Positions 54,603 to 63,992 of a stretch of DNA of 64,000 nucleotides are shown piece after piece. Position 1 is the stretch's first letter. Each line of letters begins with the position of its first letter. A model generated the notes under the pieces. The model did not search any database. It was not told the origin of the DNA and saw only the letters and a program-made list of their open reading frames with translations. The position numbers and the translations under genes are program-made. The DNA lies in IMG/VR virus record IMGVR_UViG_3300035181_000471, positions 1 through 64,000 of that record; one strand, 5' to 3'.

Positions 54603-54680
54603 TGGTGCCCTCGGAGGAATTCGAATCCCCGATCAAGGTTTTAGAGACCCCAGCTTTAGGCCAGACTAAGCTACGAGGGC
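54603..54680 (-). tRNA. amber suppressor tRNA (anticodon CTA)
   Basis: Perfect acceptor GCCCTCG/CGAGGGC, A73, loop CT CTA AA, TTCGAAT, CCA. Confidence 0.88.
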
Positions 54681-56142: not shown

Positions 56143-56964
56143 TTACTGGTGTATCTTGTGTCGCCTATCATTAAAGGAGAACTCAATATACTCTACTTTC
56201 TGGTTACCAGTGAATTTAGTCTTGAATTGTTCAATATATTTATTAGCTTTGCCCTTTTTGACATATGCTATTGTAGTATGAGGCGCATAGTCAGGGAATG
56301 AATTGGCGTTATCTGGGTAGACTTCATTGCAATAATCGAATAAATCCTGGAGTTCTGGACTCTTTTCAACCTTTATAATGAGAACATCGTATGGTGCATC
56401 AGCGGGAGTGAACTGGCTTAAACCTAACCACTCAACCGACTTGACTTCTAGGCTTGGGTTGAACTTGTCTGGTGTTTGGTCCTTAATTCCGTAGAGACAA
56501 GTAATGTGGGGGTAGTCCTCTTTTCCCTTGATCTCTCCATCGGTGTAGACATCCTCTGGATCAACACTTTCAACGAACTCTAGAATTTTCTTAGTGACCT
56601 CTGGAGCGTAAGTCAACTGCACTGTGCTGTAGTCGTAAGCGGCTTGCTTTGTAAGGAGTCTGGCGAAAAAGGTTAGGAACCCCTTTTTACCACCTTGGCC
56701 GTAAGCTCTATCGTGATCGCCTTGAACACTAAGAATGAACAAAACTCCTTCATCAACCTTACACACGGCTCTTATTCCTTGGGATACTCGGATGGAAAGG
56801 AAGCCTGGGTTAGACTTAATTGGTTCTAAGTGGGTTCCTGCCCCATCTCTTAGCTGTTGTTCAGTGGCCTCAGTGACTTTAATCCTCAGAGCATCAAGAA
56901 GACGCTTTATATTCGGATTCTTTTTTGCCTGTTTAGTAGCGTCTTTTCCAAGTTCCATTTGCAT
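56143..56964 (-). CDS. RelE/HigB-like domain fused to a 2H phosphoesterase (Acb1/T4 57B-like)
   Basis: N: HLEP....GFLSIRV..GIRAV.......H..Y; C: PHITCLYG and FPDY.PHTTIAY. Confidence 0.8.
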   Translation of the reverse strand: MQMELGKDATKQAKKNPNIKRLLDALRIKVTEATEQQLRDGAGTHLEPIKSNPGFLSIRVSQGIRAVCKVDEGVLFILSVQGDHDRAYGQGGKKGFLTFFARLLTKQAAYDYSTVQLTYAPEVTKKILEFVESVDPEDVYTDGEIKGKEDYPHITCLYGIKDQTPDKFNPSLEVKSVEWLGLSQFTPADAPYDVLIIKVEKSPELQDLFDYCNEVYPDNANSFPDYAPHTTIAYVKKGKANKYIEQFKTKFTGNQKVEYIEFSFNDRRHKIHQ

Positions 56965-57374: not shown

Positions 57375-57465
57375 TGGGTCCGTCCTAGGGGAGTCGAACC
57401 CCTTGTGCGTAAAATTACGCTGTGGTTTAAAAGACCACGGCCTGAACCGTGCGGCAAAGGACGGA
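57375..57465 (-). tRNA. atypical tRNA, anticodon TTT (Lys), long variable arm, 8-bp acceptor
   Basis: GTGGT-CT TTT AA-ACCAC; V arm GCGTAA/TTACGC; TCCGTCCT/AGGACGGA. Confidence 0.8.
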
Positions 57466-59313: not shown

Positions 59314-59387
59314 TGGTGGAGCCGGGGAGAATCGAACTCCCGATATCTGGATGCAAACCAGAGGTTATCCCTCTTAACTACGACCCC
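59314..59387 (-). tRNA. tRNA-Ala(TGC)
   Basis: Loop TT TGC AT, G3.U70. Confidence 0.9.
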
Positions 59388-59392
59388 AAAGC

Positions 59393-59473
59393 TAGACACA
59401 TTGTTGGCATTCTTTGAAGAGGAACACGCCAAGACTCTTGTTCAGGGGTTATGGGTTGCTGTTGATGTGTCTA
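59393..59473 (-). ncRNA. ACAGCAAC hairpin element, copy A
   Basis: TAGACACAT/ATGTGTCTA closing stem then CAACAGCAAC. Confidence 0.55.
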
Positions 59474-59499
59474 AGGGCTTAAGCACTACACTTAGGCTT

Positions 59500-59573
59500 T
59501 GGAGCGGGTTACGAGATTCGAACTCGTTTCGACAGCTTGGAAGGCTGAGGCACAACCCATATACCAAACCCGC
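59500..59573 (-). tRNA. tRNA-Gly(TCC)
   Basis: Loop CT TCC AA. Confidence 0.9.
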
Positions 59574-59583
59574 TTAGGCTACT

Positions 59584-60282
59584 TCACTTCTTAATACTCA
59601 ACTTATCAAGCTCTCGATGAAGAGCTTTCAACTTTTTTGCGACTGCTGGAGCTTCCTCTTCCATAGTGTGTTCATGCCACTCTTGGCTAGGACTACTGTG
59701 TGAGTTAGTATTAAGATCCCACCACTTCTCAAGCTCGTCGATTTTAGCTTTAATTTTTTCGATCTTGTCTTTTCGAACCTCAGGGAATTCTTGGAAGGTG
59801 ATGGCGTAATCGTCCTTGTCACCCACATAGGTTCTTCCAAAGTTTACCCAGTTCTCAACATTTCTGAGTTCTTTGTAGTGTTGACCCCAGATGTAGTCTA
59901 CACCCAGCTTCTCAGGGATGGATCTTAGTTGTCTTCCTGCTCCGTAAGCACGGTATTCAGGTAGAACAAAGATTGCAACACCTTTGATACCAGTCTTGTT
60001 TTCCAAGCCGTGGACGCCTAGCTCAACTAAATCAGAGGCGGGTTTCTTCTCTTTCTTCAAGAAGTAGCCACCAATAATCTGTCCATCAGCAAGCGCAACA
60101 TAACAATTACTGAAGTTATTGCCCATTTCTTCTTTGATTTCAGTCTTTACATCCTCTTCTGATAGCCCTAAGGACTCTTTAAAGGACTTAAAACAGACAT
60201 TTAAAGCTTCAGCTACTTCGCTACGCTTCATCTTTCTGATCTGGATATCAAAGGCTGTCTTGGTGAGTAAGGTGGAAATCAT
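59584..60282 (-). CDS. GNAT-family acetyltransferase
   Basis: YVA..DGQIIG, IFVLPEYRAYGAGRQL motif A; start trimmed to MISTLL. Confidence 0.82.
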   Translation of the reverse strand: MISTLLTKTAFDIQIRKMKRSEVAEALNVCFKSFKESLGLSEEDVKTEIKEEMGNNFSNCYVALADGQIIGGYFLKKEKKPASDLVELGVHGLENKTGIKGVAIFVLPEYRAYGAGRQLRSIPEKLGVDYIWGQHYKELRNVENWVNFGRTYVGDKDDYAITFQEFPEVRKDKIEKIKAKIDELEKWWDLNTNSHSSPSQEWHEHTMEEEAPAVAKKLKALHRELDKLSIKK

Positions 60283-60319
60283 TGTGTTCTCTCTATTGAG
60301 AAATAGAAAGTTAAAAGAT

Positions 60320-60396
60320 TGGTAGTCCCAACGGGATTCGAACCCGTGATAGCCACATTGAAAGTGTGGTGCCTTAAGCCGCTTGGCTATGAGACT
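60320..60396 (-). tRNA. tRNA-Glu(TTC)
   Basis: Loop CT TTC AA. Confidence 0.9.
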
Positions 60397-60405
60397 ACGA
60401 ATTTG

Positions 60406-60505
60406 ATCATCTGGATGGAGTCGAACCATCGGCCACCCGGAGTCCCCTGCAATTTGGTCCTTAACCGTGAGAGGTGGTGCGCTCTGACCGCTGAGCTACA
60501 AATGA
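60406..60505 (-). ncRNA. tRNA-like RNA with expanded anticodon domain
   Basis: Canonical acceptor, D and T arms; about 50 nt between D and T arms; no CCA. Confidence 0.65.
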
Positions 60506-60506
60506 T

Positions 60507-60586
60507 TGGTGTCCGTGGTCGGATTCGAACCGACAGTCACGACCTTCTGAGGATCGTTGCGTTGCCAGAGATTAGCATACACGGAC
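60507..60586 (-). tRNA. tRNA-Leu(CAG) with short variable loop
   Basis: Loop CT CAG AA; V loop TGACT. Confidence 0.85.
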
Positions 60587-60591
60587 ATGAT

Positions 60592-60665
60592 TGGCGAGAG
60601 TGCCAGGGGTCAAACCGGGGCCAAAGATTTTGGAGACCTTCATGCTATCGTAACACCTCACTCCC
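60592..60665 (-). tRNA. tRNA-Trp(CCA), second copy, irregular T arm
   Basis: Loop CT CCA AA; T loop TTTGACC. Confidence 0.72.
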
Positions 60666-60754
60666 ATGAGTAAATTTTGCAGAGTTATTGGCATATCTGC
60701 AACCTCCTTATGCAAAACCTACTGCGATCCCTACTGGGATTCTAGGTGGAGTAT

Positions 60755-60831
60755 TGGTCGGCCACAAGTGATTCGAACACTTGACCCCTTGCTCCCGAAG
60801 CAAGTGCGCTACCAGACTGCGCCAGTGGCCG
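60755..60831 (-). tRNA. tRNA-Pro(CGG)
   Basis: Loop TT CGG GA. Confidence 0.92.
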
Positions 60832-60841
60832 TTAATTTTAT

Positions 60842-60928
60842 TGGTCGGTGTGACAGGAATCGAACCTGCGTTTGTCCCTAATGGACCTAGCACCCCAAGC
60901 TAGTGGTCAACCATTGACCCACACACCG
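60842..60928 (-). tRNA. atypical tRNA-Pro(GGG) with long variable arm
   Basis: Loop TT GGG GT; V arm GTCC-ATTAG-GGAC. Confidence 0.85.
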
Positions 60929-60957
60929 AATTTCGTAACTCTGAATGAAATTTGAAT

Positions 60958-61032
60958 TGGTCGGGGTGAGAGGAATTGAACCTCCTACTACTCCCATCCA
61001 AAGAGAGGCGTCTACCGATGACTTACACCCCG
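60958..61032 (-). tRNA. tRNA-Pro(TGG)
   Basis: Loop TT TGG AT. Confidence 0.85.
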
Positions 61033-61144
61033 GTATTTTTAAGATGAATGGGGACTTTTTAGTCTTTGGATTAGTTTTAGACCATCCACATTCACAACAC
61101 ACTGGCCCATGTTTTTTAATGAGCAAAGTTCTTTCATAGTTCAA
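61033..61144 (-). pseudogene. truncated HNH-endonuclease remnant
   Basis: R..LI.KHG..C.ECGW...NP.T.K.P resembles the segment preceding an HNH core; the frame runs into tRNA-Pro. Confidence 0.55.
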
Positions 61145-61154
61145 CCTACTTTAT

Positions 61155-61229
61155 TGGTAGCCCTACCTGGGATCGAACCAGAATCTAACGATTATCGGTC
61201 GTTTGCACTAGCCATTGTGCTATAGGGCC
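61155..61229 (-). tRNA. tRNA-Ile(GAT), C33
   Basis: Loop CC GAT AA. Confidence 0.85.
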
Positions 61230-61278
61230 AATTTGGAGGCGGTCCCTCCAGCAAAGAGGGCGCTTATCCGGCGTTGGC

Positions 61279-61354
61279 TGGTGGAGCCATCGGGAGTTCA
61301 ACCCGATCCACTAGACTGCGAAACTAGTATGCCACGCCTCAACACTTTGGCCCC
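61279..61354 (-). tRNA. tRNA-Ala(CGC)
   Basis: Loop TT CGC AG, G3.U70, T31-T39 mismatch. Confidence 0.8.
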
Positions 61355-61356
61355 AT

Positions 61357-61432
61357 TGGAGCGTCTGACCGGACTTGAACCGGCTCCCTGAGTTTGGAAG
61401 ACTCTAGTGCTACCATTAAACACCACAGACGC
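61357..61432 (-). tRNA. tRNA-Gly(TCC), second copy
   Basis: Loop CT TCC AA. Confidence 0.88.
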
Positions 61433-61440
61433 ATTGAAAT

Positions 61441-61516
61441 TGGTGGATCTGACAGGGATCGAACCTGCCACCTACTGGATGCAAACCAGTCGCTCTCCCA
61501 AATGAGCTACAGACCC
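61441..61516 (-). tRNA. tRNA-Ala(TGC), second copy
   Basis: Loop TT TGC AT, G3.U70. Confidence 0.92.
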
Positions 61517-61531
61517 GTGTTTGTCTCTTAT

Positions 61532-61610
61532 TGGTGCAGGTAACGGGAGTCGAACCCGCAAAAACACAGCCTTCTCAGAACTGCCGCAATACCAAATAGC
61601 GTATACCTGC
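61532..61610 (-). tRNA. tRNA-Leu(GAG) with short variable loop
   Basis: Loop CT GAG AA; V loop TGTTTTT. Confidence 0.83.
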
Positions 61611-61617
61611 ATAGATA

Positions 61618-61696
61618 CAAGACTCTCTTTTTTCAAGGCAGGATTACCTGCGGCATCCCCATTAACAGGAGAATTTTGGTTGCTGTAAGAGTCTTG
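61618..61696 (-). ncRNA. ACAGCAAC hairpin element, copy B
   Basis: CAAGACTCT/AGAGTCTTG stem then TACAGCAAC; two inner hairpins. Confidence 0.6.
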
Positions 61697-61770
61697 GTGC
61701 CTTAGGTTGGAGTTGAACCAACCACACAAGGATTTTCAGTCCTTTGCTCTACCACCTGAGCTACTAAGGC
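61695..61770 (-). tRNA. tRNA-Phe(GAA)
   Basis: Loop CT GAA AA. Confidence 0.93.
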
Positions 61771-61848
61771 ATGATAAAAATTTGCGAGTGTGACTTACAT
61801 TGACTCCCAAGGTCACACAGACTGTAAGCCTACCTTTTTTCACAAAAT

Positions 61849-61927
61849 TGGTGGAGGATACCGGAATCGAACCGATTTCTATTCCTTTTCAGGGAATCGC
61901 TGGAATGACCACACTAGCTCACCCTCC
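61849..61927 (-). tRNA. tRNA-Phe(GAA), second copy
   Basis: Loop CT GAA AA; large D loop. Confidence 0.82.
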
Positions 61928-61944
61928 ATGATATTTAGATGAAT

Positions 61945-62029
61945 TGGTGGAACATGATGGGAATCGAACCCATAACCTCTGCACGGCATTGCGCCCAAAC
62001 AGTGTGCTTACCAAAGCCACTTCAGCCCC
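61945..62029 (-). ncRNA. tRNA-like RNA with Ala-type acceptor and elongated anticodon arm
   Basis: GGGGCTG acceptor with bulge, G3.U70, ACCA, good T arm; no 7-nt anticodon loop. Confidence 0.65.
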
Positions 62030-62035
62030 ATATAT

Positions 62036-62110
62036 TGGTGGAGCTACGGGGAGTCGAACCCCGAACTTTTGGATGCCGTCCAAATGTGTTCCCGCTAGCA
62101 CTATAGCCCC
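62036..62110 (-). tRNA. tRNA-Ala(GGC), C33
   Basis: Loop AC GGC AT, G3.U70. Confidence 0.85.
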
Positions 62111-62117
62111 ATGATGC

Positions 62118-62191
62118 TGGCTCCAAAAAGGGGAATCGAACCCCTGTCTCTGACTTAACAGGTCAGCATCCTACCATTGGATGATTTTGGA
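62118..62191 (-). tRNA. tRNA-Asn(GTT), conventional
   Basis: Loop CT GTT AA, G73. Confidence 0.9.
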
Positions 62192-62270
62192 ATAGTAAGG
62201 TCTCTCCCTTGTCAAGCCTGGATGATTAGCGGCTTTCCCTCCGAGGTTGGGTTGGACAGTGAATCGTTTT

Positions 62271-62981
62271 TTAGATTGCCTTCACTATCTCATTCGCCTG
62301 ATTTTTACAAACCCAGGTGTCCAACTTTTTAAGGACTAATTGTCCATGATCAAATTCCCAATGACAGTTGGGGCAAAGACCAACCAGATTATCGGGGGCA
62401 TTGATTTCTTTCAGTGTAGCGGAATCTGGGAAACTCATTACTGCTTGAATATGGCAGACCTCCACATGCTTACTATACCCACAATTAAAACAAGAATCGG
62501 TCTTGTGGCAAACACTAGCTATTCTTTGAGCGTGTTTTGTTATAACAGACCTAGCTCTCTGCCAATTAGTGCCACCGGATTCAGATTTCCCAAATAACTC
62601 TAACTTTGTTACATGGTCTCTTTTCCCTTTTAGGGGGTCTTTCTCTGCTTTAATCTTAACTACTTTTTCCTTTTTAGGTCTAAGTTTGTTATTGTAAGAG
62701 GCCGCGCAAGAGGTGGAACAGAAAATCCCGCTTTTAGTCTGAGATGGGACTCTGTGAAACTGCTTGGAACAGTTAAAACAAGAGACCTCTAATCGAGTTA
62801 TGTTATGATCGTGAAAGCATCGTTGGGAGCAGAATAATTTGATTTGCCCTCGTCTTTTCGATATAATTAAGTTGGCCTTAGATTGAGTGGTCTCTTTCCC
62901 ACACTGCTCACAAACTACAGGAATGCGATCTTTGTATTTCTTGTCCTTATATTCGATCAGCAGCGTTTCTAGTTGAGTCAT
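62271..62981 (-). CDS. HNH homing endonuclease with N-terminal Zn ribbons
   Basis: CxxC/FCSxxC repeats; C..CGY...EVCHI...N..NL..LCPNCH. Confidence 0.88.
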   Translation of the reverse strand: MTQLETLLIEYKDKKYKDRIPVVCEQCGKETTQSKANLIISKRRGQIKLFCSQRCFHDHNITRLEVSCFNCSKQFHRVPSQTKSGIFCSTSCAASYNNKLRPKKEKVVKIKAEKDPLKGKRDHVTKLELFGKSESGGTNWQRARSVITKHAQRIASVCHKTDSCFNCGYSKHVEVCHIQAVMSFPDSATLKEINAPDNLVGLCPNCHWEFDHGQLVLKKLDTWVCKNQANEIVKAI

Positions 62982-63020
62982 AATTTCTCCCTCTATAATC
63001 AAGAGTTAGAAAGTCGATTT

Positions 63021-63097
63021 TGGTTGCGGGAGGTGGAATCGAACCACGCTTTCACTATGAGCTTATGAGACTCTAGGCCAACCTCTGGCCCCGCTAT
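63021..63097 (-). tRNA. tRNA(CAT), initiator-like 1:72 mismatch, irregular
   Basis: Loop CT CAT AA; A1/A72; lacks the three GC pairs of initiators. Confidence 0.68.
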
Positions 63098-63105
63098 AAT
63101 TTTAT

Positions 63106-63180
63106 TGGTCCTCCAGGCAGGAATTGAACCCGCACTTCATGGTTCGAAGCCATGTGTTCTATCCGTTATACTACTGGAAG
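63106..63180 (-). tRNA. tRNA-Arg(TCG)
   Basis: Loop CT TCG AA. Confidence 0.88.
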
Positions 63181-63189
63181 ATAATTTCT

Positions 63190-63307
63190 CGGCCTTGGGG
63201 TTGTGGCCCCTCGCTTGCGTCTGACTCCCTGCCATCAGTCAGAACCGTGTATAGAGCCGCTAAGTCTTCCTACCTACTCCATACGGAGAGGGGCTCTCTT
63301 GTGCGGC
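63190..63307 (-). ncRNA. candidate structured RNA, about 120 nt
   Basis: On the + strand: GGGG/CCCC, TCTGACT/AGTCAGA, AGAGCC/GGCTCT enclosing CTCC-ATAC-GGAG. Confidence 0.45.
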
Positions 63308-63308
63308 A

Positions 63309-63396
63309 TGGCGGAAGATACAGGAATCGAACCTGCTTGCCTTTGACAGCCCATGCTTTCCAGGCATGTGTGACGCTCCTACTTCACCGATCTTCC
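63309..63396 (-). tRNA. tRNA-Ser(GGA)
   Basis: Loop CT GGA AA, long V arm. Confidence 0.9.
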
Positions 63397-63525
63397 ATTC
63401 TATACTAGATACTGAAAGTTTTTCAATATCGTTTGGTGGTAATTTTAGAATTATTTTTTGTAAACAACTCAGACCTTTGCTCTTATTATCGGGCGGTCCG
63501 GCGAGAACCAATCTTCGTCTTTATG

Positions 63526-63603
63526 TGGCGAGGCATAGGGGATTCGAACCCCTGATCTCTTCGTAGACAGCGAAGCGGGAACTCCGGACTTCCCCAATAC
63601 CCC
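63526..63603 (-). tRNA. tRNA-Asp(GTC), second copy
   Basis: Loop CT GTC TA, G73. Confidence 0.87.
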
Positions 63604-63611
63604 ATGATAAT

Positions 63612-63686
63612 TGGTGCCAACAAAGGGATTCGAACCCTTGACAAGAAGCTTATGAGACTTCCCCCTCACCTTTCGGGCTTGCTGGC
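63612..63686 (-). tRNA. tRNA(CAT), elongator Met or Ile2
   Basis: Loop CT CAT AA. Confidence 0.82.
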
Positions 63687-63745
63687 AAAGTGAGAGTTTT
63701 TAACTACCCAGTGGCTCTCACACTGGTCCTGGCCGTCCAAGTCAT

Positions 63746-63832
63746 TGGTACTCCTGACAGGATTCGAACCTGCGTTGGGCTTTCGCCGCACGGTTTCGTA
63801 GACCGTTACTAATCCATCTCAGTTACAGGAGC
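63746..63832 (-). tRNA. atypical tRNA-Arg(ACG) with long variable arm
   Basis: Loop CT ACG AA; V arm GGC-GAAA-GCC. Confidence 0.85.
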
Positions 63833-63840
63833 ATAGAATC

Positions 63841-63898
63841 AAGACTCGTCTTTTAGTTTCATCTTAAGTGAAAGGTTTTTAGTTGCTGTGAGAGTCTT
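63841..63898 (-). ncRNA. ACAGCAAC hairpin element, copy C
   Basis: AAGACTC/GAGTCTT stem, CACAGCAAC, inner TTTCA-CTTAAGA-TGAAA. Confidence 0.6.
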
Positions 63899-63992
63899 TG
63901 GTGACGCATGTAGGAATCGAACCTACTCAGGGCTTACTTGTGTGCCAACGGTTTTACAGACCGCCTCCGCTCTCCTACTCGGACGATGCGCC
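63899..63992 (-). tRNA. tRNA-Tyr(GTA)
   Basis: Loop CT GTA AA, long V arm, A73. Confidence 0.9.

What the first reader, a model, noticed from the sequence alone, without database searches (positions are those of the whole stretch)
59393..63898. Three-copy RNA family: closing stem, ACAGCAAC, and an inner anticodon-like hairpin
Seen: copies at 59393, 61618 and 63841 have different but fully paired closing stems (A[G]AC-start), each followed by an invariant unpaired ACAGCAAC and then variable hairpins. Copy C holds a perfect 5-bp/7-nt anticodon stem-loop (CT TAA GA, Leu-UAA-like); copy B has CT GTT AA (Asn-like, weaker register); copy A is unclear. B and C start at the CCA of the preceding tRNA. 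Inference: a scaffold with a fixed protein-binding handle that presents anticodon decoys, for example to host anticodon nucleases or RNA-repair (Ro60/RtcB) proteins.
Basis: partly seen in the sequence, partly recalled or inferred. Interest (0 to 1): 0.75.

Follow-up and report, generated by a model that had tools for sequence, protein, structure and literature searches.

The report
Phage Y-like RNAs for Ro60-like protein
The three repeats are real small RNAs, members of a large and apparently undescribed phage RNA family that sits in tRNA gene arrays and next to the gene for a diverged Ro60-like protein, so they are most likely that protein's Y-RNA-type partners.

Summary
Three co-oriented elements lie on the minus strand inside a 37+ tRNA array: A 59392-59474, B 61618-61696, C 63840-63898. 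Each has a closing stem, an unpaired ACAGCAAC after the 5' arm, and variable hairpins.

They belong to a large phage family with the consensus 5'-(U)AGAC-N4-ACAGCAA...cargo...A-rich-GUCU(A/U)-G-3'. I found about 400 distinct members. The stem covaries, neighbouring tRNAs are on the same strand 1103 times against 7, and no Rfam family matches.

Cargos are pieces of tRNA: T arm, T+D arm, or hairpins enriched about 12-fold for anticodon-like 7-nt loops.

The family travels with a ~500-aa DUF2828+DUF7788 protein whose predicted fold matches Ro60/Rsr over its full length. The protein is in 39 of 49 RNA-bearing viral records (10 of 10 near-complete) and 0 of 46 controls. In 80 protein-seeded loci all 124 RNA hits are on the gene strand, mostly within 500 nt upstream.

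The window's contig lacks the gene. A 33-kb contig from the same sample carries it, with two more handle RNAs just upstream, and a 286.6-kb sister assembly very probably carries it too.

Most likely these are Y-RNA-like partners of a phage Ro60-like protein, cut out by tRNA-processing enzymes. The decoy role is untested. This is a new variant of a known kind.

The parts
59392..59474 (-). Copy A, whole element (handle RNA)
   Evidence: CM R1 28.7 bits. Independent CM R2 28.9 bits, E 2.7e-4.
59465..59474 (-). Copy A 5' arm of the closing stem (UUAGACACAU)
   Evidence: Pairs with 59392-59401.
59455..59462 (-). Copy A motif ACAGCAAC
59404..59432 (-). Copy A inner hairpin (UUGGCGU/AUGCCAA, 15-nt loop holding GUUCCUC)
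   Evidence: MFE fold. The cargo resembles that of L331:5702-5783, which lies upstream of the Ro-like gene.
59392..59401 (-). Copy A 3' arm (AUGUGUCUA) plus the conserved trailing G
   Evidence: The trailing G is present in 148 of 150 family members.
61618..61696 (-). Copy B, whole element
   Evidence: R1 41.7 bits. R2 34.6 bits, E 1.4e-5. Fold z-score -4.1.
61687..61696 (-). Copy B 5' arm (CAAGACUCUU); its first two bases are the CA of the CCA of tRNA-Phe
61679..61686 (-). Copy B motif ACAGCAAC
61656..61672 (-). Copy B hairpin 1 (UCUCC-UGUUAAU-GGGGA), a near-Asn-like loop
   Evidence: The relative G015 has the canonical CUGUUAA at the same place.
61638..61651 (-). Copy B hairpin 2 (GCAGG-UAAU-CCUGC)
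61618..61627 (-). Copy B 3' arm (GAGAGUCUU) plus trailing G
63840..63898 (-). Copy C, whole element
   Evidence: R1 41.8 bits. R2 45.4 bits, E 4.6e-8.
63892..63898 (-). Copy C 5' arm (AAGACUC), starting one base after the CCA of tRNA-Tyr
63882..63889 (-). Copy C motif ACAGCAAC
63857..63873 (-). Copy C anticodon-like stem-loop UUUCA-CUUAAGA-UGAAA (Leu-UAA-like)
   Evidence: Read directly from the sequence. The centroid fold shows 4 of its 5 pairs.
63840..63847 (-). Copy C 3' arm (GAGUCUU) plus trailing G
63899..63992 (-). tRNA-Tyr, whose encoded CCA abuts copy C
63746..63832 (-). tRNA-Arg, starting 7 nt after copy C; its RNase P cut would set C's 3' end
   Evidence: The 4-10 nt spacing is typical of the family.
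61695..61770 (-). tRNA-Phe, whose CCA abuts and overlaps copy B
61532..61610 (-). tRNA-Leu, starting 7 nt after copy B
59500..59573 (-). tRNA-Gly upstream of copy A, separated from it by a 27-nt hairpin
59314..59387 (-). tRNA-Ala, starting a few nt (4-6, depending on where the closing stem is taken to end) after copy A

Best explanation
A, B and C are small non-coding RNAs of a phage-borne family built like Y RNAs.

Anatomy: the 5' and 3' ends pair into a 7-10 bp stem. A conserved single-stranded ACAGCAA follows the 5' arm, opposite an A-rich 3' strand, and a conserved unpaired G ends the RNA. This handle is the likely binding site for a phage-encoded Ro60-like ring protein (Pfam DUF2828 + DUF7788/vWA). 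The rest of each RNA is a swappable module that mimics part of a tRNA.

Biogenesis (inferred): in this phage the three RNAs are transcribed within the tRNA polycistron. The enzymes that mature the neighbouring tRNAs release them. 3'-end maturation of the upstream tRNA at its CCA sets the 5' end. RNase P cutting the next tRNA 4-10 nt downstream sets the 3' end.

Function (inferred by analogy with Ro60-Y RNA particles): the RNA tethers or gates the ring protein, and its tRNA-like module brings in tRNA-recognising proteins or nucleases. The setting would be tRNA damage, repair or quality control during infection.

What is shown: the family, its structure, its genomic linkage to the protein, and the protein's fold. 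What is inferred: physical binding, the processing route, and the biological role.
For: Family and structure
- A pattern scan plus stem finder gave 476 elements against 38 in reversed-sequence controls.
- The closing helix covaries. One pair shows AU 49, UA 24, GC 15 and CG 13 with no mismatches. The covariation score is 0.448 against 0.137 for shuffles (0 of 500 reach it) and at most 0.134 in slid registers.
- ACAGCAA is exact in 149 of 150 model hits and the trailing G in 148 of 150.

RNA-level strand logic
- Neighbouring tRNAs lie on the same strand 1103 times and on the opposite strand 7 times.
- Elements start 0-3 nt after a tRNA 3' end in about 42 cases. The next tRNA starts 4-10 nt downstream in about 90 cases.

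Partner protein
- ORF clustering of the flanks found a ~500-aa DUF2828+DUF7788 protein in 26 loci, on the same strand and often 5-60 nt away.
- Whole records: 39 of 49 RNA-bearing records have the protein, 10 of 10 among those at least 90% complete, and 0 of 46 control records.
- Reverse test: in 80 loci seeded by the protein there are 124 RNA hits in 42 loci, all on the gene strand. 94 are upstream, at a median of 242 nt.
- Fold: the AF2 model has pLDDT 81.5. Its top 13 Foldseek PDB hits are all Ro60/Rsr/TROVE over the full length, E 5.6e-9 to 6e-5, TM 0.38-0.56. The MIDAS motif DTSGSM is conserved.

This phage
- Protein P0029 is on a 33-kb contig of the same sample as the window's contig and on a contig of 286,616 bp. 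That is the length of the sister assembly that carries the window contig's terminal gene.
- Two handle RNAs that were not in the training set lie 155-300 nt upstream of it.
- The complete relative G015 has the same layout.

Cultured phages and expression
- Listeria, Mycobacterium and Shigella phages have the RNAs beside the gene or in the adjoining tRNA array, and nowhere else in their genomes.
- In Listeria phage CKA15, three of the most highly transcribed, unannotated regions lie within 2 kb upstream of the Rsr-like gene on the same strand (PMC12282133).

Precedent
- Ro60 with adjacent Y or YrlA RNAs is known in bacteria and in phage phiLo (PMC4201824, PMC12135203).
Against: - The 221-kb contig that holds the window has no DUF2828, DUF7788 or TROVE gene.
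- Only 42 of 80 protein-seeded loci showed an RNA within 5 kb at E<=0.001. KVP40 has the protein but no model hit.
- The handle lacks the GNCGAA/GGUCCGA motif thought to bind canonical Ro60.
- No binding or expression data exist for this phage. No RNA run holds the region.
- The complex prediction gave no usable result.
- The control records are mostly small phages, so they overstate the contrast.
Confidence: 0.75

Rival explanations
1. Anticodon-nuclease decoys that work without any dedicated protein. The closing stem only stabilises the RNA, and the anticodon-like loops soak up host tRNA-cleaving defence nucleases.
For: 7-nt loops with U33 and R37 are enriched about 12-fold. The commonest are Lys-UUU-like and Asn-GUU-like loops, which from my own knowledge are typical anticodon-nuclease targets. 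The phage carries Rnl1-like and Rnl2-type RNA ligases.
Against: This does not explain an invariant single-stranded ACAGCAA and a conserved trailing G across phages that share almost no proteins. It does not explain the tight linkage to the Ro-like gene. Most members carry other cargos (T arm, T+D arm, plain hairpins).
Confidence: 0.1
2. Cis-acting elements only: operators or leaders that regulate the Ro-like gene, or processing and insulator spacers that keep neighbouring tRNAs folding independently. On this view they are not trans-acting RNAs.
For: A cargo-less mini handle hairpin sits 12-30 nt upstream of the start codon in three independent loci. Elements fill whole inter-tRNA spacers.
Against: The window copies are not next to the gene. 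Each genome holds many paralogues with different tRNA-like cargos. Conserved T- and D-arm modules are not needed in a spacer. In a Listeria phage the regions upstream of the Rsr-like gene, where a related phage carries three handle RNAs (not matched coordinate for coordinate), are among the most abundant transcripts (PMC12282133).
Confidence: 0.08
3. DNA-level repeats: miniature inverted-repeat elements, or target sites of the homing endonucleases that populate tRNA arrays.
For: The ends are inverted repeats (TAGAC...GTCTA). HNH and GIY-YIG genes are common nearby.
Against: Orientation is strict relative to tRNAs (1103 to 7) and to the protein gene (124 to 0). The stems show compensatory changes. 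The internal sequence is not homologous between copies. The cargos are folded tRNA-like domains.
Confidence: 0.03
4. Relatives of the Dictyostelium Class I RNAs (Rfam RF01414), which also have a short terminal stem followed by CCUUACAGCAA and a variable body.
For: Copy C is the only Rfam hit besides tRNAs: 20.2 bits over the whole model. Copy B shares 10 of the 11 motif bases (PMC7919456).
Against: The score is far below the gathering score of 41.5. Four short family members in L189 give no hit. The hosts are bacteria, the genes sit in tRNA arrays with encoded CCA, and a eukaryotic promoter is not applicable.
Confidence: 0.02

Closest known systems
Bacterial and phage Y RNAs: YrlA/YrlB (Rfam RF02553; Chen et al. 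2014, PMC4201824) and Yrl1/Yrl2 of Thermus phage phiLo (PMC12135203)
   Same: The 5' and 3' ends pair into a stem and carry a conserved motif on the 5' strand. The second module is variable and in some members is a tRNA mimic (T arm, D arm, closed acceptor hairpin). Several paralogues occur per genome. They are encoded within a few hundred nt of, and on the same strand as, a Ro60-fold protein gene.
   Different: The handle motif is ACAGCAA, not GNCGAAN0-1G or CGAA. The Rfam YrlA model scores at most 40.6 bits on tRNA-like members and nothing on A, B or C (gathering score 69). The partner protein is a DUF2828/DUF7788 family that the Pfam TROVE model misses. Many copies lie inside tRNA arrays directly after a CCA. 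Many cargos are bare anticodon-like hairpins.
Ro60/Rsr (TROVE + vWA ring protein) as the likely partner
   Same: The predicted fold matches over the full length. An N-terminal helical repeat ring is followed by a vWA domain with a conserved MIDAS motif. RNA-repair neighbours occur (RtcB in a Listeria phage, RNA ligases in this phage).
   Different: Identity is only 12-15%. Neither the Pfam TROVE model nor a sequence-profile search of the PDB finds it.
T4 species 1 and species 2 RNAs (rnaC, rnaD)
   Same: Small stable RNAs encoded in and processed from a phage tRNA cluster. rnaC carries a T-arm-like hairpin.
   Different: They have no ACAGCAA handle and no matching closing stem.
Dictyostelium Class I RNAs (RF01414)
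   Same: About 60 nt long, with a short terminal stem, a motif ending in ACAGCAA directly after the 5' arm, and a variable body.
   Different: They are eukaryotic with their own promoter. The model score is sub-threshold for C and absent for other members, so this is probably a chance or convergent likeness.

Membership tests
Y RNA / YrlA-type Ro60 partner RNA | Encoded close to, and on the same strand as, a Ro60-type gene | tested here: met
   Family level: 124 of 124 hits lie on the gene strand in protein-seeded loci, with a median of 242 nt upstream. This phage: two paralogues lie 155-300 nt upstream of P0029. The three window copies themselves sit in the tRNA array, at an unknown distance from the gene.
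Y RNA / YrlA-type Ro60 partner RNA | 5' and 3' ends pair into a basal stem | tested here: met
   An 8-9 bp stem with compensatory changes. It is present in A, B and C.
Y RNA / YrlA-type Ro60 partner RNA | Conserved Ro-binding motif GNCGAAN0-1G (bacterial) or GGUCCGA (animal) | tested here: not met
   The handle carries ACAGCAA instead: 149 of 150 and 112 of 124.
Y RNA / YrlA-type Ro60 partner RNA | tRNA-like domain with T arm, D arm and closed acceptor (defines YrlA) | tested here: not met
   A, B and C have no T or D arm. Other family members do, for example L006:10491-10619 and Lewan L417:4531-4657. About 30% have a T loop.
Y RNA / YrlA-type Ro60 partner RNA | Reaches the Rfam RF02553 gathering score (69 bits) | tested here: not met
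   No hit on A, B or C. The best family member scores 40.6 bits, and Lewan scores 21.1.
Y RNA / YrlA-type Ro60 partner RNA | Physically bound by the Ro60-type protein | not testable with these tools
   The complex prediction returned no verdict for protein-RNA pairs.
Ro60/TROVE protein (partner P0029 / DUF2828) | Helical-repeat ring plus vWA fold | tested here: met
   The top 13 Foldseek hits are Ro60/Rsr/TROVE over the full length. The model was of the G015 orthologue, which is 59% identical to P0029.
Ro60/TROVE protein (partner P0029 / DUF2828) | Matches Pfam TROVE (PF05731) | tested here: not met
   There are no TROVE hits in G000-G005. G001 and G002, which do carry the protein, are among them, so the TROVE model misses it. 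The proteins carry PF11443 and PF25043.
Dictyostelium Class I RNA (RF01414) | Reaches the gathering score of 41.5 bits; 6-bp stem plus 11-nt motif | tested here: not met
   C scores 20.2 bits. Four other short members give no hit.
tRNA | Cloverleaf recognised by ARAGORN or Rfam RF00005 | tested here: not met
   Neither tool calls the three elements, even at E<=10.

The most novel reading that the evidence does not exclude
Large virulent phages of many bacterial phyla carry an unrecognised ribonucleoprotein system. A Ro60-like ring protein (DUF2828) is loaded with a set of interchangeable handle RNAs, each showing a different piece of tRNA: an anticodon stem-loop of a given identity, a T arm, or a full elbow. 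The particle would use these pieces as baits. It could capture or mislead host tRNA-cleaving defence nucleases, or bring damaged tRNAs to repair or decay enzymes. It may even be packed into the virion to act at the moment of infection, since the protein was detected in purified Listeria phage particles (PMC12282133).
Probability: 0.25. Interest if true: 0.85.

Novelty: new variant of a known kind. Interest (0 to 1): 0.72.

Why it matters
Ro60-Y RNA particles are known in animals, about 5% of bacteria and a few phages, but their function in microbes is still unclear.

- This work defines a second, much larger phage branch. The protein occurs in 711 cultured phage records and in more than 6000 database proteins at E<=1e-20. 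The RNA handle is precise enough to search with.
- It explains unassigned spacers in phage tRNA arrays. It also probably explains the unexplained, very abundant transcripts seen in a Listeria phage.
- The modular cargos, which are pieces of tRNA, give a concrete hypothesis for what the variable half of a Y RNA is for.
- Felix O1-type, P100-type and mycobacteriophage members make the question testable in ordinary laboratory hosts.

Tried and rejected
- Rfam 15, at gathering and E-value thresholds: no family fits. The Dictyostelium Class I likeness was followed and dropped.
- Canonical TROVE and RtcB in the window's contig and five other records: absent.
- T4 rnaC and rnaD: no handle.
- tmRNA-like tag reading frame starting at GCA: considered by eye. 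In-frame stops fall at variable places, so I rejected it.
- boxA-like antitermination signal, k-turn, self-cleaving ribozyme and pairing to rRNA: considered from the sequence. None fits the conserved positions or the variable cargo.
- Proteins shared between the window's phage and two other RNA-bearing phages: almost none. That pointed away from a locally linked gene until the flanks of all loci were clustered.
- Sequence-profile search of the PDB with the DUF2828 alignment: no Ro60 hit. Only the fold search found it.
- Complex prediction of P0029 with copy C: the tool gives no verdict for RNA partners. It is not evidence either way.
- Bacterial genome scan: 11 hits, all metagenome bins that look like phage contigs.
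- Literature: nothing functional on DUF2828 or DUF7788, and nothing on an ACAGCAA handle.

Full report
**Setting.** The window is the first 64 kb of a 221,217-bp viral contig from a sediment or microbial-mat metagenome. Positions 53.6-64.2 kb hold an array of 37 ARAGORN tRNAs, plus several found only by Rfam, all on the minus strand. The array is interrupted by a few small ORFs: an HNH endonuclease, a GNAT-like protein and a weak 2H-phosphoesterase/Acb1-like protein.

**The observation.** On the minus strand the three elements read:
- A, 59474->59392: UUAGACACAU-CA-ACAGCAAC...AUGUGUCUAG.
- B, 61696->61618: CAAGACUCUU-ACAGCAAC...GAGAGUCUUG.
- C, 63898->63840: AAGACUC-UC-ACAGCAAC...GAGUCUUG.

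B and C begin directly after the encoded CCA of tRNA-Phe and tRNA-Tyr, and the next tRNA begins 7 nt after each. C contains a perfect UUUCA-CUUAAGA-UGAAA hairpin. B has two hairpins, the first with the loop UGUUAAU. A has one long hairpin.

Single-sequence folding is significant only for B. ACAGCAAC occurs five times in the window against 1.68 expected, and the two extra copies lie in ORFs.

**A large family.**
- Exact-pattern scans of IMG/VR, followed by a script that looks for a complementary 3' arm, gave 476 elements against 38 in reversed-sequence controls. That is 399 distinct sequences in 162 loci.
- The consensus is (U)AGAC-N4-ACAGCAA, then 7-8 nearly G-free bases, a variable cargo, an A-rich stretch, the complementary arm ending GUCU(A/U), and an unpaired G.
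- In an alignment of 101 short members the helix shows abundant compensatory change. One pair has all four Watson-Crick types and no mismatch. The covariation score is 0.448 against 0.137 for shuffles and at most 0.134 for slid registers. These members were chosen for having a stem, so the percentage paired is inflated.
- A covariance model (R1) found 213 hits in 58 loci. ACAGCAA is exact in 149 of 150 and the trailing G in 148 of 150.
- Only A, B and C match in the 221-kb contig.

**RNA, not DNA.**
- 294 of 369 elements have a tRNA within 1 kb.
- Neighbouring tRNAs are on the same strand 1103 times and on the opposite strand 7 times.
- About 42 elements start 0-3 nt after a tRNA 3' end. About 90 are followed by a tRNA 4-10 nt downstream.
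- The elements are therefore parts of tRNA polycistrons, and tRNA-processing enzymes would define their ends. That last step is inferred.

**Cargo.**
- About 30% of members contain a T-loop motif and about 10% contain both T and D arms.
- One gut-phage member (L006:10491-10619) is a full tRNA mimic with a closed acceptor hairpin. It scores 40.6 bits on Rfam YrlA, below the gathering score of 69.
- The short members without a T loop form 114 de-duplicated cargo clusters. In them, 33 of 116 hairpin loops are 7 nt long (shuffles 7.9), and 22 have U at position 2 and a purine at position 6 (shuffles 1.8).
- The commonest such loops are CUUUUAA, CUGUUAA and AUGAUAA.

**Known families.**
- Rfam 15 has no match. 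The only non-tRNA hit is Dictyostelium Class I RNA on copy C (20.2 bits against a gathering score of 41.5). That family has the same layout and a motif ending in ACAGCAA (PMC7919456).
- Four other short members give no such hit, so I treat this as a chance or convergent likeness.
- T4 rnaC and rnaD lack the handle.

**The partner protein.**
- The window's phage shares almost no proteins with two other RNA-bearing phages.
- Clustering all ORFs in the flanks of element-bearing loci revealed a ~500-aa protein in 26 loci. It is on the same strand as the RNAs and often 5-60 nt from them. Pfam calls it DUF2828 + DUF7788 with a weak vWA signal. The MIDAS motif DTSGSM is conserved.
- Whole-record searches found the protein in 39 of 49 RNA-bearing records. 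It is in all 10 that are at least 90% complete, and every miss is a fragment at most 52% complete. It is in none of 46 control records. The controls are mostly small phages, which weakens that contrast.
- The reverse test is cleaner. In 80 loci fetched with the protein alone, R1 gives 124 hits in 42 loci, every one on the gene strand. 94 are upstream at a median of 242 nt, and 30 are downstream.
- A model built only from those RNAs (R2) recovers exactly A, B and C in the whole window.

**Fold.** An AlphaFold2 model of the orthologue from the complete relative G015 has pLDDT 81.5 and pTM 0.74. Over its full length it matches Ro60 of Thermus phage phiLo, Xenopus and human Ro60, and Deinococcus Rsr. 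These are the top 13 Foldseek hits, with E 5.6e-9 to 6e-5 and TM 0.38-0.56. Sequence methods miss the relation.

**Does this phage have the protein?**
- The 221-kb contig does not, and it is estimated to be only 77% complete.
- Its terminal gene also lies on a 286,616-bp contig from a sister sample.
- A DUF2828 protein, P0029, is 59% identical to the G015 protein. It is recorded on a contig of exactly 286,616 bp and on a 33-kb contig from the same sample as the window's contig.
- That 33-kb piece has no overlap with the 221-kb contig, has the same G+C content, and is syntenic with G015.
- Two further handle RNAs, not used in training, lie 155-300 nt upstream of P0029 (32.4 and 37.5 bits). One has a cargo like that of copy A.
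- In G015 a handle RNA also precedes the gene.
- I could not read the 286-kb record whole, so the link is strong but indirect.

**Cultured phages and expression.**
- tblastn finds the protein in 711 cultured phage records. These include Felix O1-like and Sf14-like coliphages, mycobacteriophages where it is annotated as 'Ro-like RNA binding protein', Listeria P100-like phages, and Staphylococcus, Enterococcus, Campylobacter, Vibrio and Bacillus phages.
- Listeria phage LP-083-2 has three tandem handle RNAs 72-340 nt upstream of the gene and RtcB 1.3 kb downstream.
- Mycobacterium phage Lewan has three handle RNAs just downstream of the gene. The middle one is tRNA-like.
- In Shigella phage Sf14 the gene abuts a 24-tRNA array that holds four handle RNAs.
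- Whole-genome scans of these three phages find no hits elsewhere.
- A multi-omics study of the related Listeria phage CKA15 reported three of the most highly transcribed regions of the genome. They are unannotated and lie within 2 kb upstream of an Rsr-like gene on the same strand. The authors speculated that they might be Y RNAs, and they also detected the protein in virions (PMC12282133). This fits the positions found here, but I did not match coordinates in CKA15 itself.
- The 2014 YrlA survey covered only genomes annotated with TROVE (PMC4201824). Its GNCGAA motif is not the handle seen here, and Rfam YrlA gives only 21 bits on the Lewan RNA.

**Interpretation.**
- The three window elements are members of a Y-RNA-like family that partners a diverged phage Ro60-like protein.
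- The handle is the probable protein-binding site. Canonical Ro60 likewise reads mainly the 5' strand of the basal stem (PMC4201824).
- The variable half shows pieces of tRNA.
- A cargo-less handle hairpin right before the start codon in three loci suggests autoregulation.
- The biological role is inferred from known Ro60 biology: tethering or gating the ring protein towards tRNA-recognising enzymes, or baiting tRNA-cleaving defences. The phage's RNA ligases are consistent with this. The role remains untested.

**Novelty.** Ro60 with Y RNAs in phages is known, and annotators already label some of these proteins as Ro-like. I did not find the following in Rfam 15 or in the searched literature: the RNA family with its ACAGCAA handle, its spread through tRNA arrays, its modular tRNA-piece cargos, or its systematic pairing with DUF2828 proteins. 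It is a new variant of a known kind.

Noticed in passing
window 54603-54680 (-): A tRNA with anticodon CUA (amber suppressor; ARAGORN labels it Pyl) sits in the array. This hints at possible TAG recoding in this phage.
   Followed up: no
window 56143-56964 (-): An ORF inside the tRNA array has weak matches to Acb1 / 2H phosphoesterase (22.9 and 21.7 bits, below cut-off). It could be an RNA-end healing enzyme or an anti-CBASS enzyme.
   Followed up: partly
G000 70400-71539 (-) and 95260-96294 (-), outside the window: The phage encodes a T4 Rnl1-like RNA ligase and a PHA02142/RNA_ligase-type ligase. These are among the very few proteins it shares with other handle-RNA phages.
   Followed up: partly
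L334:2951-2989, L335:2931-2971, L333:2951-2987: A cargo-less mini handle hairpin lies 12-30 nt before the Shine-Dalgarno sequence and start codon of the Ro-like gene. The stem encloses a loop holding ACAGCAA, or ACCGCAA in one case. It could be an autoregulatory operator.
   Followed up: partly
window 62271-63002 (-) and 59584-60294 (-): An HNH endonuclease with zinc-finger motifs and a GNAT-like ORF interrupt the tRNA array. GIY-YIG endonucleases are the commonest neighbours of handle RNAs in other phages (38 loci).
   Followed up: partly
window 60666-60754 (-) and 63397-63525 (-): Other inter-tRNA spacers without the handle fold better than shuffles (z -2.55 and -2.14). Their nature is unknown.
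   Followed up: no
window 56896-56947 (-): A weak R1 hit (13.8 bits) has a matching AAGACGC/GCGUCUU stem but no ACAGCAA. It lies inside the start of the 2H-like ORF and is probably chance.
   Followed up: no
window 61771-61848 (-): The spacer between the two tRNA-Phe genes contains CUUACAGUC and a closing stem. It could be a decayed relative of the handle. It is not detected by either model.
   Followed up: no
L416 (Listeria phage LP-083-2) 6857-8068: An RtcB-like ligase lies 1.3 kb downstream of the Ro-like gene, echoing the rsr-rtcB linkage of Salmonella.
   Followed up: no
literature: DUF2828 and UCP015417 are also mentioned for plant genes in several crop papers. Ro-like proteins of this branch may therefore exist in plants.
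   Followed up: no
window 57375-57465, 60406-60505 (-): Some tRNA calls are unusually long (91 and 100 nt). They may hold introns or insertions.
   Followed up: no
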